64,000 nt of DNA. Source: Macrostomum lignano (lineage: Eukaryota). The DNA is taken from contig NIVC01000924.1 in the NCBI GenBank assembly GCA_002269645.1, forward strand, positions 62,001-126,000, in the 5' to 3' direction. Position numbers and translations under genes: made by a program. Every line of letters starts with the position of its first letter. Within the stretch, counting starts at the first letter, position 1. Positions 18,002 to 64,000 of this stretch are shown in pieces. The notes beneath the pieces were generated by a model. That model saw only the letters and a list, made by a program, of their open reading frames with translations. It ran no database searches and had not been told where the DNA came from.

Positions 18002-18076
<75 letters not shown>

Positions 18077-18176
18077 TAGAAGACAGACAGACAGACAGAT
18101 AGAAGACCGACAGACAGACAGACAGACAGACACACAGACAGATAGCAGACAGACAAACAGACAGACAGATAGACAC

Positions 18177-18209
<33 letters not shown>

Positions 18210-18224
18210 TAGACAGACAGACAC

Positions 18225-18317
<93 letters not shown>

Positions 18318-18456
18318 TAGAAGACAGACAGACAGACACACAGACAGACAGACAGATAGAAGACAGACAGACAGACAGATAGAAGACCGACAGACAGACA
18401 GACAGACAGACACACAGACAGATAGCAGACAGACAGACAGACAGACAGATAGACAC

Positions 18457-18489
<33 letters not shown>

Positions 18490-18556
18490 TAGACAGACAG
18501 ACACACAGATAGACAGACAGACAGACAGACACACAGACAGACAGACAGACAGACAC

Positions 18557-18589
<33 letters not shown>

Positions 18590-23994: not shown

Positions 23995-25928
23995 TCAGTA
24001 ATAATCCTCATCCTCATTCTGACCGCCGGCAGTGGCAGCGGCAGACTTGACCACCTCCTGGCTGCTGTACATCTCGGCCAGCTGGGCGGCCGTAGTCGCC
24101 TCCTCTGGCCGTTTGTCCTCGCGGCGGCGAACGAATCTGGGGAATCGGAGGCTGACGCCGCGGCGAGGGTCGGCCAGGCCGATGGCGGCCATGTAGGCGG
24201 GGCTGAGGCTCAGGTCGGCCGCCTTCACCTCCCAGACGATGGCCGGGTCGAACCAGACGTCGGCATTTGAAGCGCCGCCGCAGCGGACGTAGGGCTTCGG
24301 CGCGGCGACCCGGTGCTCGGCCAGGTCGCGGGTGAACGCGTCCAGATCTTCGTCGGAGAAGCCGGTGCCGATTTTGCAGACGGTCTGGTATTCTTCGTCG
24401 TCGGGATTGTAGCAGGCCAACAGGAAGCCCCAAGCTTGCCGGCCCGCTTCCCGGTGCCATGGTAACCACCGACAACCACGAGGTCGAGCGTGTCGCCAAC
24501 ACCGTCGACGTAGTCTTTTTTGAGCTTCAGCCAGCTGTGCGACCTGCGCGCGTTAAATTAATTGATTGATTTGCTTATTAGACTACTTATTAGATAAAGT
24601 TCGCGTGAGTAGGATGAAGAGCTTTGTGTCTAGGAATATTACTGCCAGTATGCGTGATAGGAAAAGCAGTTTAAAATCTGATACAAGCGTAAGAAGTGGA
24701 CACGGTAGATAGATGAGCTCGTAGTAGATCAGGTAAATAAGATAGATGTACATACATATGCTGACACTCATTTTTAGTATATTGGAAGTAGACAAGTTAT
24801 ACAGGTGACAAGTAGACAAGGTAGACAGATGAGAAGTAGACAAGGTAGATAGGTAAAATCAGATAGACAGGTGACAAGGTAGACAGGTGACACGGTAGAC
24901 AAGGTAGACAGGTGACACGGTAGACAAGGTAGACAGGTGACACGGTAGACAGGTGACACGGTAGACAGGGTAGACAGGTGACATGGTAGACAAGGTAGAC
25001 AGGTGACATGGTAGACAAGGTAGACAGGTGACATGGTAGACAAGGTAGACAGGTGACATGGTAGACAAGGTAGACAGGTGACATGGTAGACAAGGTAGAC
25101 AGGTGACATGGTAGACAAGGTAGACAGGTGACATGGTAGACAAGGTAGACAGGTGACACGGTAGACAGGCAATCCAGTGTTAAGTGTCTTGCTTAAGGGC
25201 ACAAATGGTTCCAAGTGGGTCGCGAATCGAACCTCCGACCTTTCAGTCGTAAGTCCGACGCTCTAACCACTAGGCTACAACCCCCAGGTAGTAGACCAGG
25301 TAGACAGGTGAGAAATAGACAAGGTAGACACATGATACTGTGCGCGCACCTCTTAGCAATCTCGTAGGTAGCCTCAGTGTCCAAGGCTTTAAGCATGAGT
25401 CCTTCGCAGTTTCCTCGAATAGCTTCATCCAGGAAGACCTGAATCTCCTCGGTGTCGGAGCAGTCCTGCCATTTGGCCAGGGCGAAGTGGCCCGCCTGCT
25501 CTGTCTCGGCAAAGTTGAACCCATCGCGCAGAACTTGGCGTCGCTGCCTTAATGATTTCTCAACCAGCGACTCGCCGTTGTAGTACAGAATGTCGAACAC
25601 AAACACGCACACCTGGACTTTGATTGAGCCCGCGTCAGCGTCTTTTCGCTTCCGGGTTGTTAGCACCTGGGGGGGGGTGCAGAAGGTGGAGTTTCTAAAG
25701 TCAAAAAAGGTATTAGCTAGTATGTAGCGCCACGAAAGTCAGGGTCACTGTGCACCCTGTGAGAGTGTGCGATTGCGTGCCTGCGTGCTGTATTGGCTGT
25801 CTGTCTGTCTGTCAGTCTGTCTGTCTGTGTGTCTGTGTGTCTGTCTGTCTATCTGTCTGTCATCTATCTGTCTGTCTGCCTGCCTGCCTGCCTATCTGTC
25901 TCTGTCTGTCTGTCTGTCTGCCTGCCTA

Positions 25929-25979
<51 letters not shown>

Positions 25980-28900
25980 GCCTATCCGTCTTTCTGTCTG
26001 TCTGTCTGTCCAGCTCACCTGGAAAGGCAGTATCTGTCGCTTCTCCGTATCGAAGGCCACAGCTTCAGCATCCAATATGAAGTCAACCGGCTCACGGCCA
26101 GCCAGCAGGTCGGGCACCCTGGCGGCGATGTCCGGGTACTTGCTGGTGTTGTTCTCCTGATTGCGCGAGTACACCCGAACGGAGCCGTCTGACAGACGGT
26201 GAATCTGAGCGCGCTCGCCGTCGTATTTGAACTCGCAGGTGAAGGCGCCGACGCTTTCGAATCGTTTGAGCACCTCTGCGACGCCGCGGGTTGGATGGGC
26301 CAGCATGGGCTTGAGGGGCAGGCCGACTTGAAGCTGACAGCGAGACAGAAGGCCGGACAAGTCGCCGGAGCTGCAGGGGGTCGAGTATGGAGTTCGAGCA
26401 TTGTTATTGATCGAAACAAGATCAAATTGGCAAATCAATTTCATCTTTTCTACGTTTTTTAACAATAAAAAATTGTTATGGAAAACCAGGTGGCTCTCGT
26501 AGCTTTGCCGATAGTAATAAACTTGTTTTCTGAGAACGCAATACGTTAAATTTTCAAGAATTATTTTAATTAATTAAAAATTCTTTTTCTAAGAAAACAC
26601 TTCCCATTTTCTAATAAACCTCTTCCTGTTTTCTAAGAATCCACTTCTCGTTTTCTAAGAATCCACTTCCTATTGTCTTATAAACCACTTCTCGTTTTCT
26701 AAGAATCCACTTCCCATTTTCTAATAAACCTCTTCCTGTTTTCTAAGAATCCACTTCCCGTTTTCTAAGAATCCACTTCCCGTTTTCTAAGAATCCACTT
26801 CCCGTTTTCTAAGAATCCACTTCCCGTTTTCTAAGAATCCACTTCCCGTTTTCTAATAAACCACTTTCCGTTTTCTAAGAATCCACTTTCCGTTTTCTAA
26901 TAAACCACTTTCCGTTTTCTAAGAATCCAATTACCGTTTTCTAAGAATCCACTTCCCGTTTTCTAATAAACCACTTTCCGTTTTCTAAGAATCCACTTCC
27001 CGTTTTTTAATAAACCACTTTCCGTTTTCTAAGAATCCACTTCCCGTTTTCTAATAAACCACTTCCCGTTTTCTAAGAATCCACTTTCCGTTTGCTAAGA
27101 AACCACTGTTGTACTTTTGTTTTCTAAGAAACGGTTTAATTGTTTTCCAAGATCTCATCCATTAGACCCTCCACAGAAACTTCTTAAACCAATAGTCCCG
27201 CTTTCTAAGAATTCTGTTTTAACGTCTAAGAATTCAAATGCCTTAAACAGGCTCACCAGTCTTCATCCCGAGTCTCCTCAAGCAGAGCGGCAACCAGCAA
27301 GTCATAATTGGGGCAGCGGCAGTAGGCGGTCCGCACTAGCAGAGCCGCTTCGTCTTGGCGTCGTTTCCAAGAATCCGCAGATTGTCCACGCGAAGCGTCC
27401 GGAGTTTTCAAATTCGGCGACCGGACAAAAGCATGGCCGAGAGCGGACAGGACGGAGAGCTCGGCCAGGCCGATTCTGAGACGACCGGACAAAGATCGGA
27501 TGAGGTATTTGGCTTCGCACTGGCGACAGGAGACTAGCAGGGATTGAATTTTTGACACCTGCGGGTTTTGTAAGAAACTTTGATGTGACAATTAACCACC
27601 ACAAATAGTCAACTCTATTACTAGCTGTGAGCCTACATTAGATACCACAGATGAGTAATTAGCTACCAAAGATACCACAGCTGAGTAATTAGCTACCAAA
27701 GATACCACAGCTGAGTAATTAGCTACCAAAGATACCACAGGTAGATAATTAGCTACCATAGATACCACAGGTAGATAATTAGCTACCATAGATACCACAG
27801 CTGAGTAATTAGCTACCAAAGATACCACAGCTGAGTAATTAGCTACCAAAGATACCACAGCTGAGTAATTAGCTACCAAAGATACCACAGGTAGATAATT
27901 AGCTACCATAGATACCACAGCTGAGTAATTAGCTACCAAAGATACCACAGGTAGATAATTAGCTACCATAGATACCACAGGTAGATAATTAGCTACCATA
28001 GATACCACAGGTAGATAATTAGCTACCATAGATACCACAGGTAGATAATTAGCTACCATAGATACCACAGGTAGATAATTAGCTACCATAGATACCACAG
28101 CTGAGTAATTAGCTACCAAAGATATCACAGGTAGATAATTAGCTACGATGGATACCACAGGTAGATGATTAGCTACGATGGATACCACAGGTAGATACTC
28201 GTAATTAGCTACCATATAGATACCACAGGTAGATGATTAGCTACGATGGATACCACAAGTAGATAATTAGCTATCAAAGTTACTGGTAGGTGTTAAGCAC
28301 CTTCTTCTGCTGCGCGGCATTCCCAGAGAGATCGGCCACCTCGCGTAGCCGCTGAAATACGCCGGCAACAGTCAGAGGTTTCGGCTGGCACATCACAGCT
28401 TGACGCGAACGTAGCGACTCGCTCACTGCGCCAAGATCGCCGACAACTTGAGCACGTTGGCGAATTTTATCTACAGTAGAGCCGGTGCTCAAAGCCATGG
28501 CTTTTATCAGCACGGAGTCACCGACGCCCAGTTCAACAGCCTCGTAAGCTGGCGCCAACTGATTCAAGCACAGATAGACGCACGGCAGCAAATCTTTAGG
28601 GCTGAGCAGACGAACTGAACGAAGAAAATTGCATAGCAACTCTAAGATTCTTAACCGGCCAGGCGTGGCCTCGATGGCTTCGAATGTTTTGGCCAGAGCC
28701 AAGTAGGGCACCGGCTGGCCGCTCGACCAGCTCGCATCCTCTATGGGATCGTAGCGAGCTTTGCCGGGATTATAACCCGATTCTTCCTTCGGCTGCTGCT
28801 CAGACGGCGCTTCAGCTGCTGTCTTCTTCTCCTGGTCCGATTTTTCAACCTCTTTTACTTCGGCGGCGATTTTGTTTGCCTGCTTCTTTTCCGGCTTACT

Positions 28901-29626
28901 TGTTGCAGATTTTTTCCTGGCTACTTTCGATTTTGCGTCAGATTTCGGTTTTGTGTCAGAGTTCGGTTTTGTGTCAGAGTTCGGTTTTGTGTCAGATTTC
29001 GGTTTTGTGTCAGATTTCGACGGTTTCGGTTTCAATTTAGATTTGCTTTTATCGGAAGCAGATTCGGAAGCGGCAGATTCGGAAGATGACGAGGAGGAAA
29101 TCATTCGGCGACGCTTGGCAGGCGGAGATGGAGAATCCTGTTGTTGCTGAGGCGACGACAAAGACTCATCGTTGGATTCAGAATCAGAGGAACCGGACTC
29201 AGACTCAGCCTTCTTTCGCTTGTTCCGCTTGTCTTGTTTATCTGGCCTATCTAAAGACAATTTATTTTCTTTCTTAATTGTCGAAGTCTCCGCTTTCGAA
29301 GTCGGCGACTTCACCTTCGCGTCGGTAGTAGTCTTTGTTGGCGGTGTGGTCGATAAAGGGCGTCGAGTACTATCGGTGATAATAGTACTACTATCTGACT
29401 GTGCCGCAGAAGAGGCGGCAGTTTTCGAGAAGAAAGAAGTGATGGAACGTTGTTGCTGCTTCTGGCTTCCATTTTGCTGTTGCGGCATTGCGCAGGGCGA
29501 GTTTAAGATAGATAGTATTGACGTTGTTCGTACAAACAATGGGCTTGAGCAATGAAGGAAAACAGCCGACACACCTTTCTGACGTATTAAGGATGGCGCT
29601 AGTAACGTTAATAAACGAGGTAGCAT
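23995..29626 (-). CDS. LIG1: DNA ligase I; exons 29626-28301, 27558-27257, 26370-26019, 25666-25350, 24543-23995; 1-nt frameshift at 24428-24431; about 948 aa if corrected
   Basis: PIP box [28 protein letters not shown], adenylation motif [26 protein letters not shown] and OB-fold SLRFPRF. Exon lengths sum to one base short of a multiple of 3. Confidence 0.93.
24800..25165. repeat. 25-bp minisatellite (GTAGACAAGGTAGACAGGTGACATG) in LIG1 intron 4
   Basis: Period 25 (25021/25046). Confidence 0.95.
25168..25285 (-). mobile_element. tRNA-derived SINE fragment in LIG1 intron 4
   Basis: Minus strand GGGGGTTGTAGCCTAGTGGTTAGAGCGTCGGAC...GGTTCGATTC (A and B boxes), then a non-tRNA body GTGCCCTTAAGCAAGACACTTAAC resembling a widespread SINE central domain (recalled, not searched). 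Confidence 0.8.
25796..26010 (-). repeat. (GACA)n microsatellite (CTGT on +) in LIG1 intron 3
   Basis: Read directly. Confidence 0.97.
26575..27100. repeat. 22-bp minisatellite (TTTTCTAAGAATCCACTTCCCG) in LIG1 intron 2
   Basis: Period 22. Confidence 0.95.
27640..28275. repeat. 30-bp minisatellite (GATACCACAG[GTAGATA/CTGAGTA]ATTAGCTACCA[T/A]A) in LIG1 intron 1
   Basis: Period 30, two interspersed variants. Confidence 0.96.
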
Positions 29627-33958: not shown

Positions 33959-34818
33959 TTAATTTGCGGCGTCGGTCCCTTCGGCCCCGGGAATTGTTAC
34001 GGCGTCGACAGTTCCAGCGTCCCTCGATCGTCTGGCGGCCGCAGCGGACGCCGTGTTGACGTTAACGGCGTTGGTCGCCGCGTCGCTACTTGACAATCGT
34101 TGCTGCTTTTTGCTGCTTAATTTTTTCTTACCACTTGCTAACAATTGCCGGTAGAAGTCTGAGCGCAGGAATCTGCCGTAGGAGTCGGACTTCATCAGCT
34201 GAAATATGTGCTCCTCGGCCGCTTCGAATGCGTAACGATCAGCTGAGGCGGCTGTAGCGCTGGACATCCGTTTTCGGACAGCTTCGGCCACCGGGCCGGC
34301 CACGTTGACCGGCTCCGTAGCGTCCGGTCCAAGGAAGGTGTCGTAGATCCGATTGACCTCCTTGTGTACCTGACTGGCCGGGGCGTGGCGCAACCGTTGG
34401 CAGGCCTCCCAGAAGGCCAAATTCTCGGCGCTAACCTCTTTTAGTAGCCATTTCTCGAATTCCTGCCGGCCAGCCGGGTCGCGCAGCAGCTCGTGAATGC
34501 TGAAGCCCCAGCGCTTCACCCGCCTAGCCGGGACGTCCCGGGTTCGACGCTCAGATTCCCAATAGTCGGCGCTGTCCGATACCCACGGATTCTGGCTCTG
34601 GTCGGGCAGGCCGCCGCCAATGAATGCGTCAAATTCGGCATACTGCTGATAGTAGCATATGGCGCTCTCGGCCGCTTTGGACACTTTCACGCGACTGAGA
34701 GGGGGCGGGCGTTTGGAATCGGTGCCGCGATTGCCTCATTTCTGGTATACGAACTGGGCCTCACTGTCTTAGTGTCTGTCTGTCTGTCTGTCTTAGTGTC
34801 TGTCTGTCTGTCTTAGTG

Positions 34819-34871
<53 letters not shown>

Positions 34872-37800
34872 TAGTGTCTGTCTGTCTTAGTGTCTGTCTG
34901 TCTTAGTGTCTGTCTGTCTGTCTTAGTGTCTGTCTGTCTTAGTGTCTGTCTGTCTTAGTGTCTGTCTGTCTTAGTGTCTGTCTGTCTGTCTTAGTGTCTG
35001 TCTGTCTGTCTTAGTGTCTGTCTGTCTGTCTTAGTGTCTGTCTTAGTGTCTGTCTGGCTGTCTGTCTGTCTGTCTGTCAGCCGGTCTGTCACCTGAGACT
35101 AACTCACCGCCTAGCCAGTGCCTGCCGCAGTTTGTCAGCCTTCGCGGCTGGCTCACACGGCTCCACGGGACTGAGCCGGCCGCTCGGTATGGGGAAGGTG
35201 GCGGGCCTGGTGGCCACCTTCTTTGGCCGTTTAGCCCGGCACAGCTTGCGCATGTCGACCTCCGTGGCCACGACTGCGCCAGGCGGCGGCCTGTAGAGCA
35301 GCCAGAAGCCGCGCTCCTGACTCTCCAGCACCATGCGCTCGAGCCGTTCCAGCTTCCTGCACAGGTTGAGAGTGGCGGATAGAATGATTAATTAGCGTGT
35401 CTGTGGTGGTGTCTTTTGCAGTATCCGTTGTAGTGTCTGTGGTTGTGTCTGTGGTAGTGTCTAGTAGTGTCTGTGGTAGTGTCTGGTAGTGTCTGGTAGT
35501 GTCTGGTAGTGTCTGTTGTAGTGTCTGTTGTAGTGCCTGTGGTAGTGTCTGCTGTAGTGTCTGTGGTAGTGTATGTTGTAGTGCCTGTGGTAGTGTCTGG
35601 TAGTGTCTGTGGTAGTGTCTGGTAGTGTCTGTGGTAGTGTCTGGTAGTGTCTGTTGTAGTGTCTGTTGTAGTGCTTGTGGTAGAGTCTGTGGTAGTGTCT
35701 GGTAGTGTCTGTTGTAGTGTCTGTGGTAGTGTCTGTTGTAGTGCTTGTGGTAGTGTCTGGTAGTGTCTGTGGTAGTGTCTGTGGTAGTGTCTGTGGTAGT
35801 GTCTGGTAGTGCCTGTGGTAGTGCCTGTGGTAGTGTCTGTGGTAGTGTCTGTGGTAGTGTCTGTTGTAGTGTCTGTTGTAGTGCCTGTGCTAGTGCCTGT
35901 AGTAGTGTCTGTGGTAGTGTCTGTGGTAGTGTCTGTGGTAGTGTCTGTGGTAGTGTCTGTTGTAGTGTCTGTTGTAGTGCCTGTGGTAGTGTCTGTTGTA
36001 GTGCCTGTGGTAGTGTCTGTGGTAGTGTCTGTGGTAGTGTCTGGTAGTGCCTGTGGTAGTGCCTGTGGTAGTGTCTGTGGTAGTGTCTGTTGTAGTGCCT
36101 GTGCTAGTGTCTGTTGCAGTGCCTGTTGTAGTGTCTTTGGTAGTGTCTGTTGTAGTGCCTGTGGTAGTGTCTGTTGTAGTGTCTGTGGTAGTGTCTGGTA
36201 GTGCCTGTGGTAGTGCCTGTGGTAGTGTCTGTGGTAGTGTCTGTTGTAGTGCCTGTGCTAGTGTCTGTTGCAGTGCCTGTTGTAGTGTCTTTGGTAGTGT
36301 CTGTTGTAGTGCCTGTGGTAGTGTCTGTTGTAGTGTCTGTGGTAGTGTCTGGTAGTGTCTGTTGTAGTGTCTGTTCTAGTGTCTGGTAGTGTCTGTTGTA
36401 GTGCTTGTGGTAGTGCCTGTGGTAGTATCTGTGGTAGTGTCTGGTAGTGTCTGTGGTAGTGTCTGGTAGTGCCTGTGGTTGTGTCTGTTGCAGTGTCTGT
36501 TGTAGTGCCTCTTGGTGTCTGTTGTGTGTCCTAGTGTGTTTCAGTGTCAAACTTGTTGTCTGTGAATGTCGCTATGTATTAACAATATAATCCACGTGGT
36601 ATATTTGCAATTGAACACCGAAACACACACATACGCAATTTGCACTTTAGTCGCCCTAACTAAAGAGAAATAAAGGAAGTTACTCTAAAAAATTCAAACT
36701 AATATCTCTGCCACATTTGCTTGACAGACGAAAATCCTCTACTAAAAAATTTACAGACCGCTCGTAAGCAGAACAGAGGGCACTAAAAGCACAGCTGCTA
36801 CCCGTAAATGCACAGAACAATTTTATGTATTTAGGAATTAGAAAATTATTTTCAAAGCTGTCCGCTGCGTGACTAACGGGCCGGTCCATTGTTCCGGACT
36901 GCTGGCCCATGATAAGCGCAGAGGCGCCGCTGTCTCTCTTGCAACCCAAACTGCCAACTCCGATGCGACACTGTGAGAACTGCTGTCAATATCAGAGCTC
37001 AACTGGGTGCGAATATGCCTCTGATGTCTGCATATTGAGCAGCTGGAGGCGCAACTACTGATAATGTAAGCTGAGTGGCTGCTGCACCTGGGTCTGGGAG
37101 GGCGGTGGCTGAGCCTGGGATTTGGGAGGGCGGTGGCTGAGCCTGGGGTCTGGGAGGGCGGTGGCTGAGCCTGGGATTAGGGAGGGCGGTGGCTGAGCCT
37201 GGGGTCTGGGAGGGCGGTGGCTGAGCCTGGGATTTGGGAGGGCGGTGGCTGAGCCTGGGGTCTGGGAGGGCGGTGGCTGAGCCTGGGGTCTGGGAGGGCG
37301 GTGGCTGAGCCTGGGGTCTGTGAGGGCGGTGGCTGAGCCTGGGAGGGTAGTGGCTGAGCCTTGAGTCTGGGAGGGCGGTGGCTGAGCCTTGGGTCTGGGA
37401 GGGCGGTGGCTGAGCCTTGGGTCTGGGAGGGCGGTGGCTGAGCCTTGAGTCTGGGAGGGTGGTGGTTGAGCCTGGGGTCTGGGAGGGCGGTGGCTGAGCC
37501 TTGGGTCTGGGAGGGCAGTGGCTGAGCCTGGGAGGGTAGTGGCTGAGCCTTGAGTCTGGGAGGGCGGTGGCTGAGCCTGGGAGGGTAGTGGCTGAGCCTT
37601 GAGTCTGGGAGGGCGGTGGCTGAGCCTGGGAGGGTAGTGGCTGAGCCTTGAGTCTGGGAGGGCGGTGGCTGAGCCTTGGGTCTGGGAGGGTGGTGGCTGA
37701 GCCTTGAGTCTGGGAGGGCAGTGGCTGAGCCTGGGAGGGTAGTGGCTGAGCCTTGAGTCTGGGAGGGTGGTGGTTGAGCCTGGGGTCTGGGAGGGCGGTG

Positions 37801-38793
37801 GCTGAGCCTTGGGTCTGGGAGGGCGGTGGCTGAGCCTGGGGTCTGGGAGGGCGGTGGCTGAGCCTGGGGTCTGGGAGGGTGGTGGCTGAGCCTTGGGTCT
37901 GGGAGGGTGGTGGCTGAGCCTTGGGTCTGAGAGGGCGGTGGCTGAGCCTGGGAGGGTAGTGGCTGAGCCTTGAGTCTGGGAGGGCGGTGGCTGAGCCTGG
38001 GGTCTGGGAGGGCGGTGGCTGAGCCTGGGGTCTGGGAGGGCGGTGGCTGAGCCTGGGAGGGTAGTGGCTGAGCCTTGGGTCTGGGAGGGCGGTGGCTGAG
38101 CCTGGGGTCTGGGAGGGCGGTGGCTAAGCCTGGAGTCTGGGACGGTGGCGGTGGCCCAATAATTTGGCCTCATTTACGTGGAACTAAGATGATAGAGCTT
38201 GGTAATTCTACAATCCAAAAGATCCATTGTAACAAAAATAAAGCCGAAATCAGCTTTACCTATCAACCTTAGCCTCGGCCTCCGCCTGCAGGTAGATAAA
38301 CTCCCATTTGTGAGACAGTAGGCGCTGCAGCCTGGCCAAATTCTCAGCCTCATAATTGGCCAATTCCAATCGCTGCTTATTGAGCAGTGTTCGCTTGCAC
38401 AGGTAGACAGCATAGTCAGTGTTGTCCAGCCGATCTGGTGATTTACTGGGCCACAGGCAGGGCGTTTGAAATCGATAATAGGAAGAATCGTTGCGTACAA
38501 CCAGAGCCGTGCCTTCGACTGGGATGATGTAACCGTGAGCTGCCAGCATGCTGGCCACGTGACAGGCCTCCTGCGGTAATGGTCGGATCGGATAGTCATT
38601 AGTTAGCTAGTAGCTCGCATGTGTTTAGCAAATTGAATAAAAATTGACTGCTGCTACTGGTAGTAGCACTACCTACCTAGCCCAAGGCACTACCAACACT
38701 AATATTACTAAAACTACAACAAATATTACTACTAATAGTCCAAGTAATACTGCTAATAGTACACTACTAGCACTACTACTACTGCTACTACTG

Positions 38794-38831
<38 letters not shown>

Positions 38832-40316
38832 GTCTCCAAGTGAGAGGGAGTGAGAGGGAGTGAGAGGAAGCGAGAGTGAGAGAGTGAGAGGAAGCGAGAG
38901 TGAGAGAGTGAGAGGAAGCGAGAGTGAGAGGGACTGAGAGGAATCGAGAGGGAGTGACGGAGAGAGTGAGGGAGTGACGGAGAGTGAGAGAGAGTGACGG
39001 AGAGTGAGAGGGAGTGACGGAGAGTGAGAGGGAGTGACGGAGAGTGAGAGGGAGTGACGGAGAGTGAGAGGGAGTGACGGAGAGTGAGAGGGAGTGACGG
39101 AGAGTGAGAGGGAGTGAGAGGAAGCGAGAGGGAGTGAGATGGAGTGAGAGGAAGCGAGAGTGAGAGGGAGTGAGAGGGAGTGAGATGGAGTGAGAGGAAG
39201 CGAGAGTGAGAGGGAGTGAGAGGAAGCGAGAGGGAGTGAGAGGAAGCGAGAGGGAGTGAGATGGAGTGAGAGGAAGCGAGAGGGAGTGAGAGGGAGTGAG
39301 AGGAAGCGAGAGTGAGAGGGAGTGAGAGGAAGCGAGAGGGAGTGAGATGGAGTGAGAGGAAGCGAGAGTGAGAGGGAGTGAGAGGAAGCGAGAGGGAGTG
39401 AGATGGAGTGAGAGGAAGCGAGAGGGAGTGAGAGGGAGTGAGAGGAAGCGAGAGTGAGAGGGAGTGAGAGGAAGCGAGAGTGAGAGGGAGTGAGAGGAAG
39501 CGAGAGTGAGAGGGAGTGAGAGGAAGCGAGAGGGAGTGAGATGGAGTGAGAGGAAGCGAGAGGGAGTGAGAGGAAGCGAGAGTGAGAGAGAGTGAGAGGA
39601 AGCGAGAGGGAGTGAAAGTGAGAGGAAGCGAGAGGGAGTGAGAGGGAGTGAGAGGAAGCGAGAGGGAGTGAGAGGGAGTGAGAGGAAGCGAGAGTGAGAG
39701 AGAGTGAGAGGAAGCGAGAGTGAGAGAGAGTGAGAGGAAGCGAGAGGGAGTGACGGAGAGTGAGAGGGAGTGAGAGGAAGCGATCGAGGGAGTGAGAGGA
39801 AGCGAGAGGGAGTGAGAGGAAGCGAGAGTGAGAGAGAGTGAGAGGAAGCGAGAGTGAGAGAGAGTGAGAGGAAGCGAGAGGGAGTGACGGAGAGTGAGAG
39901 GGAGTGAGAGGAAGCGATCGAGGGAGTGAGAGGAAGCGAGAGGGAGTGACGGAGAGCGTAGAGGGAAAGACTCGATATGCCCTAACCTGAGCATCCTCTG
40001 CATCGGTGTTACGCAGAAGCCAGCCGCACAGCTCCGACCCAGTGAAACAAGACGGCTGACAGGACATAAAGGATTTAACAGTGCGCACAGAGATGCCTGC
40101 GTCTTCCTGTTGTAGCCGTTCTAATAGTCGCTCTAGTCGGGACCATTGGTAAGCGTTGGGATGCGGCGGGCGGCCAGCCTCAGTGGTGACTGGTGCTGTT
40201 TTTGCTTTAGCGTGTCTGGCGTGGTGTCGCATTACTGAGGTGGATGTTGCACTGCTGCTGCTGCTGCTGCCAGCACTGCCGGAGCTGCAGGCAGCCTGAG
40301 TCTGTTGCTGCTGCAT
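33959..40316 (-). CDS. RGS7: R7-family regulator of G-protein signalling (RGS6/7, EGL-10-like; DEP-DHEX-GGL-RGS); exons 40316-39987, 38570-38260, 35356-35108, 34694-33959; about 541 aa
   Basis: DEP (GISVRTVKSFMS...FTGSELCGWL, AAHGYIIPV, YYRFQTP), DHEX (NTDYAVYLCKR, SQERGFW), GGL (RVKVSKAAES...EFDAF) and RGS box (WGFSIHELLRDPAG, SAENLAFWEAC, LMKSDSYGRFLRS). Phases consistent; the 5' end could extend further. Confidence 0.92.
34765..35078 (-). repeat. (GACA)n-type microsatellite with TTAGTGTCTG interruptions in RGS intron 3
   Basis: Read directly. Confidence 0.95.
35400..36530. repeat. 10/12-bp minisatellite (GTAGTGTCTG[TG/TT]) in RGS intron 2
   Basis: Read directly. Confidence 0.96.
37075..38145. 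repeat. G-rich 28/21-bp minisatellite (CTGGGAGGGCGGTGGCTGAGCCTGGGGT) in RGS intron 2
   Basis: Period 28 (37141/37169) with a 21-bp deletion variant. Confidence 0.96.
38760..39957. repeat. (ACT)n microsatellite followed by a 1.1-kb GA-rich polypurine compound repeat in RGS intron 1
   Basis: ACT run about 38760-38830; GAGAGGAAGC/GAGAGGGAGT/GACGGAGAGT modules 38842-39957. Confidence 0.95.
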
Positions 40317-56522: not shown

Positions 56523-58294
<1,772 letters not shown>

Positions 58295-59179: not shown

Positions 59180-61050
59180 CAGCAATAAGATTGCATCATA
59201 AGGCCAAGATCCCAAGAAAGCCCTTAAATAGTGGCATGATCCTTTATCTTAAGAATCATCACAGTGGTCTGGAGTCTGTGCTGTGCATCTGCAAACCAAA
59301 GACACTAATTGCAAGTGGCAATTGGAAGAAGCTGATAGCACCCGCATGCAGGAATGCAAGTTGCAGCCAACACTAGAAGAGTTTTCTGTTTGACAGCAGA
59401 AATGGTCAGATGATGACACAAAGACACAAGAATTGACATGCACTATTGGTTTGTCATATTGTATTTCTTTTAATTATTTTATATACTACATATTTTGAAT
59501 ATGCTTTCTAATTTGATTCTTTTTAACTTTAATAAAATTCAAACTTAAATGCCTTTAATGAAGATGATTGCAATCAATTTTTAGCCTTTCTTAGTCGTGG
59601 AACACCCTGGCTTTCTGCAGCTTATGGCAAAAGCTTTGCCAAAATACAGAGTGCCTGGCCAAATTTTTTTTGCTGAAAAAGTTATCCTGGACATCTACTG
59701 CAAAGTCTGTCAGCATGTACACAAGAGCCACTTGATGAGGCTAAATACATTGCCACTGCCAGTACAAGTGCTGAATAGATATCCATGAAGAGAAAAAGGT
59801 CAGTAGTTAGTTTAATTGCTTACTTTATGATCAACTTCTCAATTCAGAGTGTAGTGTTGCTATGCAATGCACCTATTGAAAGAGTATCAACTAGTGTAAA
59901 CATTGCTAAGGCCCTTAATGAAGCCATTGACCAGTTCAATGTATGCCAGAAGATTGTCACCATCACAACAGATAAGTGATCAATATCATAAATGTGAATA
60001 GCTCTTCAGGAACTGGAAGTTCCAAGGCAGTCTTGTGTCATTCACAAATTGCAAAACTGCATCCAGGACAGTATTCTAGATGATGCTAAGACATCACCTG
60101 CTTAGCATTCCATTAAAGATGCAATTGGCAAATGTTGTTTAATTGTGTATCACTTTTTTTACTTCTCTAAAGGCTCATCAAGAGTGGCCAGAGCTCTGCA
60201 TTGAACTTGGTGCTAAGTCAATGAAGTCCCTCATTTAAGATTTGTAGACATGCTGGGACTCCTAGCTTGCCATGCTTGAGTTGTTTTGCAACCAAAATCT
60301 TGTTGTCTAAATGTGCTAGAAACAGTGCTAGATATTACTTGCTAGTAGCACTTAATCAAGCAGACTAGGATCTTATTGATGCTATTATCTATAGCCTGAA
60401 GTCTTTCAAGGATATTGCAACTGCCATCTCCAATGTTATCTACAAGGGGTGTCCAAAAAGTAGTAGGAATTTTCAATGTAGTTCATACCTAGAGTCAGAT
60501 ATATAAATGGCATTGACATTTCATGAAAGCGGCTTTATCTATCTATGCAAAACATTTTGAATTATGTTAATATCTACTGGCATTTAAAAGTTATGAGCAA
60601 TTTAGTGCAGTTCCCAAGGTTATAACTTACAAAAAATGTCTTTGCCTAGGTTTTAAGCTTCACTTTATACTTTTGACACACCATGTTTATGTGAAGATGC
60701 CAACAGATATGGTAACACATGCCTATGGGCTGAATACCAAAACTATGAATATATGTAGCATAATTATCAAAGCCAGGCAATGCTAAGCTTTATATGGATA
60801 GCACAGCTCAACCAGACATCTTGTCAGCTTGCGCTTCTGAAGCAACCAAGTTTGTACCAACATGTCAAATATCCACTCAAAAGAGGGGCAGCACCGTGTC
60901 ATTTTTACTCTATGGAGCCTTGGACTTAATGGATTGGAGATTTTAAGTAAACTATAACACATCCATCATCCATAGACAGCATGTAGTGAGCAAAAGCACG
61001 GTTTACTAGTGGATTGAGGATGTTGTCATGCTTTGTTTTTATGACTACCT
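59180..61050 (+). pseudogene. Decayed hAT (Ac/ZBED-like) transposase
   Basis: Interrupted translations KMIAINF*PFLVVEHPGFLQLMAKALPKYRVP, ITITTDK, SCVIHKLQNCIQD and TCWDS match hAT motifs (PFS.VE..GF, TTDNG.N, C..H.L.L, TRWNS). Many stops and frameshifts. Confidence 0.75.
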
Positions 61051-61537
61051 GTTAAAAGTTTCTATAAGTTATACCCTAGAGAACTGCACTAAATTGCTCA
61101 CAACTCTTGAATGCCTTCTATACACTACTTTGCATCTTGGACTCTGGCTTACTATAATAGAACTAGGATTTACCTAGTCATGATCATTATTATAAACAAA
61201 GAGATTAATTAGGCATTTATTTATTTAGGCAAATCATACATGTACAACCCCCTGATTTACACTGGCCATGCAATTTACTTTTTGACCAAAAATGCAACTT
61301 ACCTATGAAAGAAACCCTGAAGCAAATTATGTTACCCTTGCCACTGTGTTGGTGGTAAGGGCGTTTAAACTGCAAGGGGAGGGGCTCGCTTGGCTGGGGC
61401 GGGTGCGTGCAGGGTGGCGTGTGCTGCGGGGGGCGGGGGGTCGCGGGGGTGCTAGCTTGATTTCTATTTAGTCCGGTCCTTTGCTTGTTCGCCGTGCGTT
61501 CGTGTTTGCTCAGATTTTTTTCTCAGCCACAATCAAT

Positions 61538-62623
61538 ATGGCCACCTCTAGTCAGCTGCAATCAGTCACCAATCTGAGCGTGCCTCAACTAAAGACGGCA
61601 TTGCAAGCGCGCAAATTACCAACAAAAGGTAGCAAGGCTGCCCTACGTACTTGTCTGTGCGACGCGATTCTCAACAAGCGTCTAGCTGCTGACACCGCGA
61701 ACAGGACTTCCCACAGGGAGCCACCGTGGGATTCTGACGGCTCGTCCAATGGAGGGAGCAGCCGGCGGTCCAAGGGGGGTGGCACCTCTTTGGGTGGCGC
61801 GGCTCTGGATGAGGAGATCCAGCTCACCCGATGGCGCATTGAACTGCTAAGGCTGCAGAAAGAAGAGGCGGAGCTGCAACGGTCGGTGGATAAGGCACCA
61901 GATAATCGCGGTAAGCTACCAGAATTTTTGAGCCAGTCTGCTTGCGCTGAGTCTGATAGGTGGTCCAATGATAGTGAACTTGATGCTGCTATTTTTGCTC
62001 CAAGCAACGCTAGAGTTATATCCGGGTGGCTGCTTCGTATTTGCGACTTCATTGATGCCCCTGGCCAGGCTGACGAGCTTCTTGCGCAGGGTGAGACAGC
62101 CAAGCAGAATCTCAAGAGCAGTAGACCAAAATCTGTAGACTCTGTGACAGTCGGCCAATGGATTTCTGCCAATGCTAAAATTATGTATGCCATGCTGCAA
62201 TCCGGACAGCTAGCGTCTCACGACACCGATAGTGAGCCAAAAAGTCTCTTGGACTACTTGCAGCACGTTATCCACATCGGCGATTTGCTTGATGGGGGGT
62301 ACGACTGGCAAGTCCTTCTTCGTTATGATGACGACCTGCATAAGTTCCAGCATGCAAACGCCTCCAAGTGGTCCCAGCCGCCTTTGTCTTTGATTTGTAA
62401 GCACCTTATGGCCCCAAAGAACCTTCATAGTCGGCAAGCCAGCCAGACTGGCCGCGGAGGCCGCCAACAATTCGCTTCGCGAGGCCAAGCGGTCTGTGGA
62501 CTGTTTAACAGCGCTACCGGATGTCAGAGAGACACCTGCAACTATCTGCACTGCTGTCGGATTTGTGGTGGCTCACATGCTGCTGCTAGCCACACCAACC
62601 ATGCTAATCAAGCAAAAAACTGA
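61538..62623 (+). CDS. Gag-like ORF1 with N-terminal SAP motif and C-terminal zinc-finger-like cluster (361 aa from ATG 61538)
   Basis: LSVPQLKTALQARKLPTKGSKAAL (SAP-like); WQVLLRYDDDL; CGLFNSATGCQRDTCNYLHCCRICGGSH. Confidence 0.75.
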   Translation: MATSSQLQSVTNLSVPQLKTALQARKLPTKGSKAALRTCLCDAILNKRLAADTANRTSHREPPWDSDGSSNGGSSRRSKGGGTSLGGAALDEEIQLTRWRIELLRLQKEEAELQRSVDKAPDNRGKLPEFLSQSACAESDRWSNDSELDAAIFAPSNARVISGWLLRICDFIDAPGQADELLAQGETAKQNLKSSRPKSVDSVTVGQWISANAKIMYAMLQSGQLASHDTDSEPKSLLDYLQHVIHIGDLLDGGYDWQVLLRYDDDLHKFQHANASKWSQPPLSLICKHLMAPKNLHSRQASQTGRGGRQQFASRGQAVCGLFNSATGCQRDTCNYLHCCRICGGSHAAASHTNHANQAKN

Positions 62624-63168
62624 GAGAAGCGTCGCATGCAGATTCCATCGCCTGCGACGCCTTCTCTTTTAACTTCCTGCCTGCCCGCGACATCGCCCAA
62701 CCTGCCTGCCTGCCTGCCTCCGACGTCGTTCAACCTGCCTGCCTGCCTGCCTCCGACGTCGCTCAACCTGCCTGCCTGCCTGCCTCCAATGTCGCTCAAC
62801 CTGCCTGCCTGCCTGCCTCCGACGTCGCTCAACCTGCCTGCCTGCCTGCCTCCAACGTCGCTCAACCTGCCTGCCTGCCTGCCTCCAACGTCGCTCAACC
62901 TGTCTGCCTGACTGCCTCCGACGTCGCTCAACCTGCCTGCCTGACTGCCTCCAATGTCACTCAACCTGCCTGCCTGCCTGGCTCCGATGCTACCAAACCT
63001 GCCTGCTTGTCGGCCTCCGTCATCGACCCTGCCTACTGGCTAGCTAACGACTGTCCTCCGGTCAATCCCCGTCAGTGCAGCGACCTCGTCGTGGCTGTCT
63101 GGGAGGAGCGTCTTTGTGGAGATCCGGATAAGAATTTCCTTGTTGACAGTCTTCGTGCTAGTTTTTGA
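62608..63168 (+). CDS. Pol-like ORF2 N-terminus in the -1 frame (186 codons, no own ATG; missed by the ORF track)
   Basis: Stop-free from 62608 to TGA 63166-63168; contains about 9 QPACLPASDVA repeats, then YWLANDCPPVNPRQC... Confidence 0.65.
   Translation, partial: SSKKLREASHADSIACDAFSFNFLPARDIAQPACLPASDVVQPACLPASDVAQPACLPASNVAQPACLPASDVAQPACLPASNVAQPACLPASNVAQPVCLTASDVAQPACLTASNVTQPACLPGSDATKPACLSASVIDPAYWLANDCPPVNPRQCSDLVVAVWEERLCGDPDKNFLVDSLRASF
62614..62667 (+). promoter_or_regulatory. Predicted -1 ribosomal frameshift signal: A_AAA_AAC slippery site plus 14-bp hairpin
   Basis: Heptamer 62614-62620 is in X_XXY_YYZ phase directly before the ORF1 TGA; stem 62623-62636 pairs with 62653-62667 (one C bulge). 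Confidence 0.7.
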
Positions 63169-63749
63169 AGCAAATTAACACAATTTTTGATAAACAGCAG
63201 GAGTACCTATAACCTTATTATAAAGGGCTAAATGCCTTGTCATCTAATTAGTACTACATCTGTATTCTTTGGGGTGGGAATTTTTGCGACTTATCCCTGG
63301 TCTACCACAATTTACAATGGCCAAGTTGGCTAGCAGTTGCACATGGGGAAATCCAAAAATCGGGGGCAAGTTTTATGAAAATTCGTTTTTTGGCAATTTG
63401 AAAGCAATAAAGCTATAAAATAAATTTATTCAAGTTTTTAAAAAGTAAAAAAGTCTATTAAAGCACAAATTATTTTCGTATAGCTTTATTTTTAATAAAA
63501 TGATTTGTTAAAACGGTAAGTTTAATTACGACCTAAAATGAGTCTAATGAAAATGATTGAAAAGCTATAATAATGTATTTTATTAACTTTAACTATATTA
63601 TAATGTTACACTCTATAATTCTACAACATATTTAACATTATTTTAAGGTTTTATTTGTTTATCACTTTCGTTACTCTTGACAACGTGTATTTTGTAGAGT
63701 TCGTTTGCAATAAATTGTATTCAACGTAAGTTTATTATTTAAACATACA

Positions 63750-64000
63750 AATTCCCGTAAGGGTCGGAAAATTGCATTTTACTCAGCTTCTACTGAAGCG
63801 ATTTGGAAAATTCTTTTTTTCCTGCATACACGCCGCGATGATACATGTTTTAGTGTAATTTCATTGTTCTTCGTCGCTTAATAAGCATACAGTAAGCATC
63901 TGATTTGGAAGCCGGGTAACACATTGGAATTCCCATAAGGATTGGAAAATTGCATTTTACTCAGCTTCTACTGAAGTGATTTGGAAAATTCTTTTTTTCC
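63750..64000. repeat. Start of an approximately 178-bp tandem repeat (about 1.3 copies before the window end)
   Basis: GGAAAATTGCATTTTACTCAGCTTCTACTGAAG.GATTTGGAAAATTC recurs at 63766 and 63944. Confidence 0.6.

What the first reader, a model, noticed from the sequence alone, without database searches (positions are those of the whole stretch)
62605..62667. Canonical -1 programmed frameshift signal joining gag and pol in a DIRS/Ngaro-like element
Seen: ORF1 ends GCA AAA AAC TGA, an A_AAA_AAC heptamer in exact slippage phase. The -1 frame opens only 6 nt earlier (after TAA 62605) and stays open for 186 codons to an RT-proximal motif. A 14-bp stem (AGAGAAG-CGTCGCA / TGCGACG-c-CTTCTCT, 16-nt loop) follows immediately. 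Known: A_AAA_AAC plus a downstream structure drives -1 frameshifting in retroviruses such as MMTV; how YR retrotransposons express their overlapping ORFs is, to my knowledge, poorly characterised. Inference: retrovirus-style Gag-Pol fusion in a YR retrotransposon.
Basis: partly seen in the sequence, partly recalled or inferred. Interest (0 to 1): 0.8.

Follow-up and report, generated by a model that had tools for sequence, protein, structure and literature searches.

The report
Frameshift signal in a truncated Ngaro-like retrotransposon
The window holds the front end of a dead tyrosine-recombinase ("Ngaro-like") retrotransposon, and its gag gene ends in a ribosome-slippage signal that twelve diverged relatives also keep, so this class of mobile element most likely makes a Gag-Pol fusion the way many retroviruses do.

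Summary
ORF1 (61538-62623) ends GCA AAA AAC TGA, with the heptamer (62614-62620) in X_XXY_YYZ phase. The -1 frame opens at 62608 and runs 186 codons. A -29 kcal/mol hairpin (62622-68) follows directly.

Caveats:
- The window has no RT or recombinase; the element is cut off at about 63165.
- About 121 of the 186 codons are a 33-bp minisatellite with no stops in any forward frame.
- The hairpin is not homologous in relatives.

- A profile of relatives' pol N-termini matches only the -1 frame piece.
- All 12 independent lineages with pol in -1 carry an in-phase A_AAA_AAY heptamer 0-1 codons before the gag stop. The amino acid before it varies, but that codon's third base is always A.
- Two relatives have uninterrupted gag, RT/RNase H and tyrosine-recombinase ORFs.
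- Relatives have no methyltransferase and no inverted repeats; one has split direct repeats. This fits Ngaro-like, not DIRS1-like.
- Sister lineages use an in-frame stop or a +1 overlap instead.

Verdict: a real, conserved, canonical -1 frameshift site that is a fossil at this locus. It is a new member of a known kind, of moderate interest.

The parts
61340..63165 (+). 5' fragment of a Ngaro-like tyrosine-recombinase retrotransposon. The 5' bound is approximate. The 3' bound is where homology and G+C content end.
   Evidence: G+C is 0.5-0.62 here against 0.24-0.4 in the flanks. Gag and pol N-terminal homology to relatives lies inside these bounds. No RT or YR is found anywhere in the window.
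61538..62623 (+). gag-like ORF1, 361 codons plus TGA, uninterrupted
   Evidence: ORF list. Homologous to P0001 at E 2e-23. A two-sequence profile finds 1709 cluster representatives at E<=1e-3.
61565..61645 (+). SAP domain of Gag
   Evidence: Pfam PF02037, E 5e-7, above the curated cut-off. The family profile hits SAP-domain structures in the PDB. The domain is shared by relatives.
62495..62578 (+). C-terminal Cys/His finger region of Gag (C-x8-C-x4-C-x3-H, then C-x2-C-x3-H)
   Evidence: C320, C329, C334, H338, C340, C343 and H347 are invariant in an 11-sequence alignment. There is a weak ZAP-like CCCH Pfam hit in relative L004.
62605..62607 (+). TAA that closes the -1 frame upstream. It limits any shift into pol to 62608-62620.
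62614..62620 (+). Slippery heptamer A_AAA_AAC in X_XXY_YYZ phase of gag
   Evidence: Conserved in 12 of 12 lineages with pol in -1. RNA-level constraint shown. It is the only AAAAAAC in the element fragment.
62621..62623 (+). gag stop codon TGA, directly abutting the heptamer
   Evidence: The same NCA AAA AAC TGA arrangement is found in the five closest relatives, L018-L022.
62622..62668 (+). Hairpin: lower A/G-rich stem, one bulged C, G+C-rich upper stem, 16-nt loop that adds a few internal pairs in the MFE fold
   Evidence: -29 kcal/mol, z -4.97, 0/200 shuffles. 0 of 477 G+C-matched windows of the element are as stable. It is one of 6 such places in 64 kb. No pseudoknot partner was found and there is no Rfam match.
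62608..63165 (+). pol fragment in the -1 frame: 186 open codons, no ATG, ending at the truncation. It contains the linker, the minisatellite and the first ~30 residues of pol homology.
   Evidence: Translation. A profile of relatives' pol N-termini hits only this piece among 75 six-frame pieces, E 4e-5. BLASTP against L001 pol gives E 2e-5.
62673..63035 (+). 33-bp (11-codon) minisatellite of about 11 units, in frame, inside the Gag-Pol linker
   Evidence: TRF reports 62676-63019, period 33, 10.4 copies, 90% matches. The unit-by-unit register shows decaying edge units. The unit has no stops in any forward frame.
63067..63165 (+). pol N-terminal motif (the conserved W..E.L..D.D..F region that precedes RT in relatives)

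Best explanation
The feature is the gag-pol recoding cassette of a Ngaro-like tyrosine-recombinase retrotransposon. It survives in a copy that has lost everything after the first ~30 residues of pol homology.

Proposed mechanism in intact family members:
1. Ribosomes translate gag, which encodes a SAP domain, a coiled region and a Cys/His finger.
2. Most ribosomes stop at the stop codon that sits on or one codon after the heptamer.
3. A minority slip back one base on A_AAA_AAC. The P-site Lys-tRNA moves from AAA to AAA and the A-site Asn-tRNA from AAC to AAA.
4. A stable RNA structure just downstream helps. In this copy it is the 62622-62668 hairpin, whose G+C-rich upper stem lies 8-9 nt from the heptamer.
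5. The shifted ribosomes read on in the -1 frame through a short linker into RT/RNase H, giving a Gag-Pol fusion at a fixed low ratio.

Shown: the heptamer, its phase, the hairpin, the -1 frame homology to pol, conservation of the heptamer at RNA level, and intact relatives with this layout.

Inferred: that ribosomes actually shift there, that the hairpin is the stimulator, and the size of the shifted fraction.

At this locus the signal is a fossil, because no pol enzyme lies downstream.
For: 1. Anatomy. The heptamer is in phase, the overlap is only 13 nt, the hairpin is present, and the -1 ORF has no ATG.

2. The pol N-terminus lies in the -1 frame (E 2e-5, the only hit among 75 six-frame pieces, E 4e-5).

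3. Junction census. Twelve independent lineages have pol in the -1 frame: the window, L002, L004/5, L006, L007, L010, L011 and L018-L022. All 12 carry A_AAA_AAY in phase.
- Z is C in 11 and T in 1.
- The gag stop follows directly in 9 (TGA in 6, TAG in 3) and one codon later in 3.
- The overlap is only 7-22 nt in five of them.

4. RNA-level constraint. The residue before the site varies (A, S, T, P, E), yet its third base is A in 12/12 and Lys is AAA in 12/12. The G+C-rich gag genes otherwise prefer AAG (window 6 AAA to 12 AAG; L022 2 to 13) and have 4-30% third-position A. The product of the per-locus probabilities is 10^-14.3.

5. Protein-level echo. Of 130 gag representatives that end soon after the finger, 25 end in KN, KNx or KNxx. 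Ten of the 12 closest to the window gag end in KN.

6. Intact relatives. L006 is a 5051-bp unit, and L006 and L007 both have gag, pol in -1 open for more than 260 codons, and YR, all uninterrupted.

7. Downstream structure. The 55 nt after the heptamer fold more stably than G+C-matched windows of the same elements. The Fisher combined p is 7e-5, or 2.7e-3 without the window.
Against: - No measurement of frameshifting exists.
- The hairpin is not homologous between lineages. L002, L004, L011, L021 (over 55 nt) and L022 show no significant local fold, so covariation cannot be tested.
- The spacer to the base of the window's stem is 1-2 nt, shorter than the usual 5-9 nt (my knowledge of -1 frameshift sites).
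- The six-A run could also support polymerase slippage.
- Sister lineages manage without the heptamer. They use an in-frame stop (L001, L008, L009, L014) or a +1 overlap (L023).
- L015 has pol in the -1 frame without a canonical heptamer.
- The loci are homologous, so the 10^-14 figure overstates independence.
- This copy is truncated and carries a minisatellite in the linker.
Confidence: 0.75

Rival explanations
1. Polymerase slippage rather than ribosomal slippage. RNA polymerase II or the element's reverse transcriptase adds one A in the six-A run. A subset of transcripts or copies then carries gag and pol in one frame.
For: The site is a run of six A. Homopolymer slippage by reverse transcriptase at a retroviral shift site is documented (abstract of PMC5737442, listed).
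Against: - The run is exactly six A in 12/12 lineages and never longer. Slippage would favour longer runs.
- The run is always in X_XXY_YYZ phase and always followed by a pyrimidine that makes an Asn codon. Those are ribosomal-site rules (my knowledge) and are irrelevant to a polymerase.
- Stable folds are enriched just downstream.
Confidence: 0.08
2. The K-N ending is conserved for a protein reason. Pol is expressed independently of gag, through an internal start, reinitiation or splicing, and the heptamer is a by-product.
For: K360 and N361 are invariant in the alignment of 11 gag proteins. Some relatives have an ATG in the linker: L002, L004, L011 and L022.
Against: - Synonymous and neighbouring-codon choices are fixed at RNA level: AAA rather than AAG, and third base A across five different preceding amino acids.
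- The window, L018, L006, L007 and L010 have no ATG between the site and the pol motif.
- The -1 frame is closed just upstream of the heptamer in several lineages.
Confidence: 0.07
3. Coincidence. The long -1 ORF is an artefact of a stop-free tandem repeat, and the heptamer and hairpin sit next to it by chance in decayed DNA.
For: About 121 of the 186 codons come from a unit with no stops in any forward frame. The opposite strand and the 0 frame are also open over much of the array. The window is full of such repeats.
Against: - The non-repeat parts are open in -1 and carry pol homology.
- The heptamer is the only one in the fragment.
- The hairpin is one of 6 comparably stable sites in 64 kb.
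- The same junction recurs in 11 other lineages.
Confidence: 0.03

Closest known systems
gag-pol (or gag-pro) -1 programmed ribosomal frameshift sites of retroviruses and LTR retrotransposons
   Same: An X_XXY_YYZ heptamer of the A_AAA_AAC type sits at the very end of gag. Pol overlaps in the -1 frame, and a stable RNA structure lies just downstream. The presumed purpose is a fixed low Gag-Pol to Gag ratio.
   Different: - The host element is a tyrosine-recombinase retrotransposon. It has no detectable protease or DDE integrase.
- Gag has a SAP domain and a CCCH-type finger, with no match to a retroviral capsid or nucleocapsid domain in Pfam.
- The gag stop codon abuts the heptamer in 9 of 12 lineages.
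- The downstream structure is lineage-specific, and no pseudoknot was found.
- There is no Rfam frameshift-element match.
Ngaro superfamily of tyrosine-recombinase retrotransposons (order DIRS)
   Same: Relatives have gag, then RT/RNase H, then YR in that order. They have no methyltransferase. One has split direct repeats, and none has inverted repeats.
   Different: [quoted passage not shown] Here gag and pol overlap with a defined shift site.
- I found no description of a SAP/CCCH Gag for Ngaro in the papers read.
- No named Ngaro reference sequence could be compared with these tools.
DIRS1-like retrotransposons
   Same: A tyrosine-recombinase retrotransposon with a gag-like ORF1 and overlapping ORFs.
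   Different: DIRS1-like elements have a methyltransferase domain after RNase H, and inverted terminal repeats with an internal complementary region (PMC3266345). Neither is present in the relatives.
In-frame stop-codon readthrough at gag-pol (gammaretrovirus type)
   Same: Sister lineages L001, L008, L009 and L014 have gag and pol in one frame separated by a single stop. L008 and L009 share the same TAG context, and L009 has a stable fold after it, z -3.26.
   Different: This is not the arrangement in the window. No readthrough-stimulating structure has been established, and decay of a single long ORF is not excluded for single copies.

Membership tests
Canonical eukaryotic -1 programmed ribosomal frameshift signal | Heptamer X_XXY_YYZ in the phase of the upstream ORF | tested here: met
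   GCA AAA AAC at 62612-62620 in the gag frame
Canonical eukaryotic -1 programmed ribosomal frameshift signal | The heptamer lies inside the overlap between the end of the upstream ORF and an open -1 ORF | tested here: met
   The -1 frame opens at 62608 and gag stops at 62621. The overlap is 13 nt.
Canonical eukaryotic -1 programmed ribosomal frameshift signal | The -1 ORF encodes the functionally linked downstream protein | tested here: met
   Only the -1 piece matches the profile of relatives' pol N-termini, E 4e-5. BLASTP gives E 2e-5. Only ~30 residues of homology survive.
Canonical eukaryotic -1 programmed ribosomal frameshift signal | Stable stem-loop or pseudoknot about 5-9 nt downstream | tested here: inconclusive
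   A strong hairpin is present, z -4.97. Its base starts 1-2 nt after the heptamer and its G+C-rich upper stem 8-9 nt after. There is no pseudoknot.
Canonical eukaryotic -1 programmed ribosomal frameshift signal | Heptamer conserved in relatives beyond what coding requires | tested here: met
   12/12 lineages carry it. AAA for Lys and third-base A before the site run against local codon usage, product 10^-14.3.
Canonical eukaryotic -1 programmed ribosomal frameshift signal | Downstream structure conserved with covariation | tested here: inconclusive
   The structures are not alignable between lineages. There is only an excess of stable folds at the position, Fisher p 7e-5, or 2.7e-3 without the window.
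Canonical eukaryotic -1 programmed ribosomal frameshift signal | Measured frameshifting | not testable with these tools
   No expression or translation data are available.
Ngaro-like YR retrotransposon | RT/RNase H pol | tested here: inconclusive
   Absent from the window. Present in relatives: RVT_1 at E 4e-16 and 2.5e-13. Window membership rests on gag and pol N-terminal homology.
Ngaro-like YR retrotransposon | Tyrosine recombasine ORF after pol, with H-x-x-R and a catalytic Tyr | tested here: inconclusive
   Absent from the window. In relatives the ORF carries the HS[FM]RRGGA... and ...Y motifs. Its best PDB match is Cre recombinase, E 8e-4. The Pfam hits are only weak.
Ngaro-like YR retrotransposon | No methyltransferase domain | tested here: met
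   In relatives the YR ORF overlaps the end of the RT/RNase H ORF, and no methyltransferase family was hit.
Ngaro-like YR retrotransposon | Split direct repeats (A1 ... B1 A2 B2) | tested here: inconclusive
   L005 has A1 at 8314-8508 and A2 at 13029-13223, with B1 at 12632-12931 and B2 at 13779-14078. About 550 nt separate A2 from B2. L004 shows only the A pair. This cannot be tested in the truncated window copy.
DIRS1-like retrotransposon | Methyltransferase domain, and inverted terminal repeats with an internal complementary region | tested here: not met
   There is no methyltransferase hit and no inverted repeats in L004, L005, L006 or L007.
gag-pol stop-codon readthrough | pol in the same frame as gag, separated by one stop | tested here: not met
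   In the window pol is in -1. The feature is met only in sister lineages L001, L008, L009 and L014.

The most novel reading that the evidence does not exclude
A large clade of Ngaro-like tyrosine-recombinase retrotransposons with a SAP/CCCH Gag (1709 cluster representatives at E<=1e-3) uses a strictly conserved A_AAA_AAC-plus-stop -1 frameshift cassette to make Gag-Pol. As far as the searchable literature shows, this clade is uncharacterised.

Sister clades of the same Gag family have swapped this cassette for an in-frame stop or for a +1 overlap marked by a conserved PPRFR peptide. The DIRS order would then contain, within one Gag family, all three recoding solutions known from retroviruses and LTR elements. 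None of them has been documented for this order.
Probability: 0.5. Interest if true: 0.6.

Novelty: new member of a known kind. Interest (0 to 1): 0.45.

Why it matters
How tyrosine-recombinase retrotransposons express their overlapping ORFs is essentially undescribed. The papers I could read only say that the ORFs overlap or are 'frameshifted'. No paper in the searchable library links DIRS or Ngaro elements with a slippery site or with programmed frameshifting.

- A conserved canonical heptamer at gag-pol gives a concrete, checkable answer for one large clade.
- It improves annotation. Gag and pol of these elements are currently called as separate, unnamed genes.
- It shows that the Gag-to-Gag-Pol ratio problem was solved in the same way outside the LTR and retroviral lineage.
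- The co-occurrence of -1, in-frame-stop and +1 junctions within one Gag family makes the clade a natural comparative set for how recoding signals are exchanged in evolution.

Tried and rejected
- **RT and YR in the window.** tblastn with relatives' RT, YR and pol N-terminus found nothing beyond gag. The DIRS/Ngaro label cannot be drawn from the window alone.
- **Exact-protein look-up** of the window gag found nothing on record.
- **Single-sequence indexed search** gave only one homologue. The alignment-based indexed search returned only two. The exhaustive profile search was what opened up the family.
- **Viral-contig scan** gave no confirmed relative.
- **Rfam** on 61000-64000 at E<=1 gave no match.
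- **Pseudoknot search.** Testing the hairpin loop against 70 nt downstream gave at most 4 bp, which 95% of shuffled loops also reach.
- **Covariation of the stem** was not attempted. The downstream regions are not alignable between lineages (26-48% protein identity) and no close copies were available.
- **Whole-region z-scores** of relatives' downstream 80 nt are mostly weak. A position-specific rank test against G+C-matched windows was used instead.
- **Pfam hits of the -1 ORF** (Colipase-like, Mucin-like, DUF4705) were rejected as low-complexity matches to the minisatellite translation.
- **The primary Ngaro papers** (Goodwin and Poulter 2004; Poulter and Butler 2015) are not held. Prior mention of a shift site there cannot be excluded.
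- **Host organism.** No attempt to identify it was completed.
Full report

Yes. ORF1 (61538-62623, 361 codons) ends GCA AAA AAC TGA.

- The heptamer occupies 62614-62620 in X_XXY_YYZ phase.
- The -1 frame is closed by TAA at 62605-62607 and then stays open for 186 codons, to 63165. Any shift into it must therefore occur within 13 nt.
- The hairpin pairs 62622-62668. Its MFE is -29 kcal/mol over 80 nt, with z -4.97 and 0 of 200 dinucleotide shuffles as stable.
- Only six places in the whole 64-kb window hold a 50-nt tile as stable, and none of 477 G+C-matched 55-nt windows of the element does.
- AAAAAAC occurs 27 times on both strands of the window against 21 expected, but only once in the element fragment.
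- Under uniform composition, three in-phase positions times about 1/512 gives roughly a 0.6% chance of a canonical heptamer in that 13-nt overlap. This figure is my own estimate.

**2. What weakens the observation as stated**

- The stretch 62673-63035 is a 33-bp tandem array of about 11 units (TRF: 62676-63019, 10.4 copies, 90% matches). Its edge units decay in identity.
- The unit has no stop in any forward frame, and the opposite strand is open too. About 121 of the 186 open codons therefore carry no information.
- The informative parts are the 22 codons before the array and the 43 codons after it.
- The -1 ORF contains no ATG.
- The Pfam hits of its translation (Colipase-like, Mucin-like) are low-complexity artefacts.

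**3. What the window holds**

A G+C-rich island at about 61340-63165 sits in A+T-rich DNA. It contains three things.

- An uninterrupted gag-like ORF. It has a SAP domain (Pfam PF02037, E 5e-7; the family profile hits PDB SAP domains) and a C-terminal Cys/His finger (invariant C and H columns).
- The gag-pol junction.
- About 30 residues that match the pol N-terminus of relatives.

Counting breaks: gag has none. Pol is truncated once, losing everything after its N-terminal motif, and carries one in-frame tandem-repeat expansion in its linker.

No RT, RNase H or recombinase homology exists anywhere in the window. After 63165 the sequence is unrelated A+T-rich DNA with its own 80-nt direct repeats.

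**4. What kind of element it is**

Relatives were reached in four steps.

- The single indexed hit P0001 and its contig L001.
- The pol N-terminus of L001, used as a query.
- Contig look-ups.
- A metagenome scan.

They show the following features.

- The gene order is gag, then a pol with RVT_1 (E 4e-16 and 2.5e-13) and an RNase H-like tail, then an ORF with the H-x-x-R and Tyr motifs of tyrosine recombinases. That ORF's best PDB match is Cre recombinase, E 8e-4.
- The recombinase ORF overlaps the end of pol, so there is no room for a methyltransferase, and none is hit.
- L005 has split direct repeats in the order A1, ORFs, B1, A2, B2.
- No relative has inverted repeats.

This fits the Ngaro description and not the DIRS1 description given in PMC3266345. 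L006 is a 5051-bp unit with identical 127-nt ends. L006 and L007 have all three ORFs uninterrupted.

Other copies are decayed.

- L002 has each of its three genes interrupted at least once.
- L003 is heavily degraded.
- L004 has pol interrupted at least once.
- L005 has gag interrupted once and pol at least once.
- L011 has several interruptions in gag and pol.
- L018 has one frameshift in pol.

**5. Junction census**

I located the gag C-terminus and the pol N-terminus by tblastn, then read each junction as it stands.

Pol is in the -1 frame in twelve independent lineages: the window, L002, L004/L005, L006, L007, L010, L011, L018, L019, L020, L021 and L022.

| Feature at the junction | Count |
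|---|---|
| Third base of the preceding codon is A | 12/12 |
| Next codon is AAA | 12/12 |
| Following two bases are AA | 12/12 |
| Last base (Z) | C in 11, T in 1 |
| gag stop directly after the heptamer | 9 (TGA in 6, TAG in 3) |
| gag stop one codon later | 3 |

- The overlap within which a shift is possible is 7-22 nt in five lineages.
- The five lineages whose gag is closest to the window (26-48% identity) share the exact arrangement NCA AAA AAC TGA.
- Where the contig is long enough, the pol motif follows in -1 after 17-35 codons, or about 50 in L021.
- The window needs 162 codons, of which about 121 are the array. Its non-repeat linker of about 41 codons is therefore of family-typical length. 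This is arithmetic only; nothing was excised.

**6. RNA or protein constraint?**

- The residue before the site varies (Ala, Ser, Thr, Pro, Glu), but its codon always ends in A.
- Lys is always AAA, although the G+C-rich gag genes prefer AAG (window 6 to 12, L018 3 to 11, L019 2 to 11, L022 2 to 13).
- These genes use third-position A in only 4-30% of codons.
- Multiplying each locus's own probabilities gives 10^-14.3. The loci are homologous, so this overstates independence, but at 26-48% protein identity synonymous sites are saturated.

At protein level, an exhaustive profile search found 1709 cluster representatives at E<=1e-3.

- Of the best 150, 130 end within 45 residues of the finger.
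- Of those 130, 19 end in KN, 5 in KNx and 1 in KNxx.
- Ten of the twelve closest to the window gag end in KN.

**7. Downstream structure**

The window's hairpin is by far the strongest. It is not homologous to anything in the relatives, so covariation cannot be assessed.

For each locus I compared the MFE of the 55 nt following the heptamer with G+C-matched 55-nt windows elsewhere in the same element.

| Locus | Fraction of matched windows at least as stable |
|---|---|
| window | 0 of 477 |
| L006 | 0.008 |
| L019 | 0.02 |
| L007 | 0.047 |
| L010 | 0.07 |
| L018 | 0.08 |
| L002, L004, L011, L021, L022 | not significant |

- The Fisher combined p is 7e-5, or 2.7e-3 without the window.
- Over 80 nt, L021 has an 18-bp long-range stem, z -2.25.
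- The window shows no pseudoknot partner and no Rfam match.
- The base of the window's stem starts 1-2 nt after the heptamer, closer than the usual 5-9 nt. Its lower seven pairs are A/U- and G/C-mixed. Its G+C-rich upper stem begins 8-9 nt downstream.
- A ribosome positioned on the heptamer would have opened the lower stem and would face the upper one. This last point is inference from general knowledge of -1 frameshift sites.

**8. Mechanism proposed**

Ribosomes translate gag. Most stop at the abutting stop codon. A minority slip back one base on A_AAA_AAC, helped by the downstream fold. They then read through a short linker into RT/RNase H, giving a Gag-Pol fusion.

- Shown: the sequence anatomy, the homology, the conservation, and intact relatives with this layout.
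- Inferred: the slip itself, the role of the fold, and the ratio.
- At this locus the signal is a fossil.

**9. Rivals**

- **Polymerase slippage on the six-A run.** This is disfavoured. The run is never longer, it is always in ribosomal phase, and it is always followed by a pyrimidine that completes an Asn codon. It is not excluded.
- **Protein-level conservation of K-N with independent pol expression.** This is contradicted by the synonymous-site pattern and by the lack of any ATG in the linker of five lineages.
- **Coincidence created by the repeat.** This is refuted by the comparative data.

**10. Comparison with known systems**

- The site works like the gag-pol -1 frameshift sites of retroviruses and LTR retrotransposons.
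- It meets the sequence-level criteria for that kind of signal, except that structure conservation and spacing are inconclusive and function is unmeasured.
- The element family fits Ngaro and fails the DIRS1 criteria.
[quoted passage not shown] PMC9210276 notes that all ORFs overlap in two Xenopus Ngaro-like families.
- No paper in the searchable library combines DIRS or Ngaro with slippery sites, programmed frameshifting or readthrough as a mechanism.
- The original Ngaro papers are not held, so prior mention cannot be ruled out.

**11. Diversity found on the way**

- Sister lineages L001, L008, L009 and L014 have gag and pol in one frame separated by a single stop. L008 and L009 share the same TAG context, and L009 has a stable fold after it, z -3.26.
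- A third gag subgroup has a conserved PPRFR peptide near its end (14 of 130 representatives). In the one locus read, L023, pol is in the +1 frame.
- Pol-to-recombinase junctions also vary between +1, -1 and 0, with long overlaps and no canonical heptamer noticed.

**12. Verdict**

The feature is a canonical -1 frameshift cassette in a clade of elements where it had not been characterised, preserved here in a truncated copy.

- Novelty: new member of a known kind.
- Interest: 0.45. It is useful for annotation and for the comparative study of recoding, but mechanistically unsurprising.

Noticed in passing
window 62673-63035; L019 1252-1323: An in-frame minisatellite sits in the Gag-Pol linker just after the shift site. 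In the window it has 33-bp units (11 codons, about 11 units). In the closest gag relative, L019, it has 21-bp units (7 codons) running to the contig end. The hairpin's 3' arm resembles the core of the window's unit (10 of 12 bases), which suggests that the array grew out of the native linker.
   Followed up: partly
L001 1478-1480; L008 1257-1259; L009 1725-1727; L014 495-497: In these sister lineages gag and pol are in the same frame, separated by one stop, and there is no heptamer. L008 and L009 share the context AGG TAG GAT AT. L009 has a stable fold after the stop (z -3.26). This may be a readthrough type of gag-pol junction.
   Followed up: partly
L023 1780-3787; gag representatives: Fourteen of 130 gag representatives carry a conserved PPRFR peptide a few residues before their stop. 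In the one locus read (L023), pol overlaps in the +1 frame. This may be a third recoding type in the same Gag family.
   Followed up: partly
L002, L004-L007, L010, L012-L014, L016 (pol-YR junctions): The recombinase ORF is +1 relative to pol in six lineages, -1 in L004/L005 and in frame in L012/L013. In most of the frame-shifted junctions (L002, L004/L005, L006, L007, L010) the overlap is about 100-600 nt, and no canonical heptamer was noticed. A conserved H-M-S near the pol end recurs in L004, L006 and L010.
   Followed up: partly
L006 1-127 and 5052-5178: This metagenome contig has identical 127-nt ends with a 5051-bp period and three uninterrupted ORFs. It is either a circular or tandem assembly of a complete element, or possibly the circular intermediate expected for recombinase-based retrotransposons.
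   Followed up: no
L012 4-9, L013 711-716, L015 1975-1980, L016 1-6: In this clade (sample Ga0307400) a stop codon followed directly by TGT G.. is conserved some 20-30 codons upstream of the pol N-terminal motif. L015 in addition has pol-frame sequence in -1 relative to gag without a canonical heptamer. The junction type is unresolved.
   Followed up: no
window 61756-61810: A second hairpin as stable as the one at the shift site lies inside gag. It is among the 6 most stable 50-nt tiles of the window.
   Followed up: no
window 61396-61449: A G-rich 16-nt tandem tract (GGGGCGGGTGCTGCGG, 3.2 copies) lies about 90 nt upstream of the gag start codon, in the presumed 5' untranslated or repeat region of the element.
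   Followed up: no
window 60579-60635 and 61059-61115: A pair of 57-nt inverted repeats, 86% complementary and 423 nt apart, lies just upstream of the element. It looks like a small inverted-repeat (MITE-like) element.
   Followed up: no
window 63743-63822 and 63921-64000: An 80-nt direct repeat (91% identical, spaced 178 nt) lies in the A+T-rich DNA that replaces the rest of the element. This could be another repeat family inserted at or next to the truncation, so the rest of pol might lie beyond the window end.
   Followed up: no
window 57052-57750; 57959-58243 (-): A (TCTG)175 microsatellite lies next to an exon-like ORF with 14-3-3 protein signature residues. The host is a eukaryote with casein-kinase-I-like (6344-6817 -), DNA-ligase-I-like (25193-29626 -) and RGS-like (33959-34690 -) coding pieces.
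   Followed up: no
window 2212-4622, 6842-8164, 16044-16889, 17749-18721, 27592-28215, 37055-40316: The window is unusually rich in long stop-free minisatellites that produce spurious ORFs of 150-600 codons on both strands. Any 'long ORF' argument in this genome needs a repeat check.
   Followed up: no
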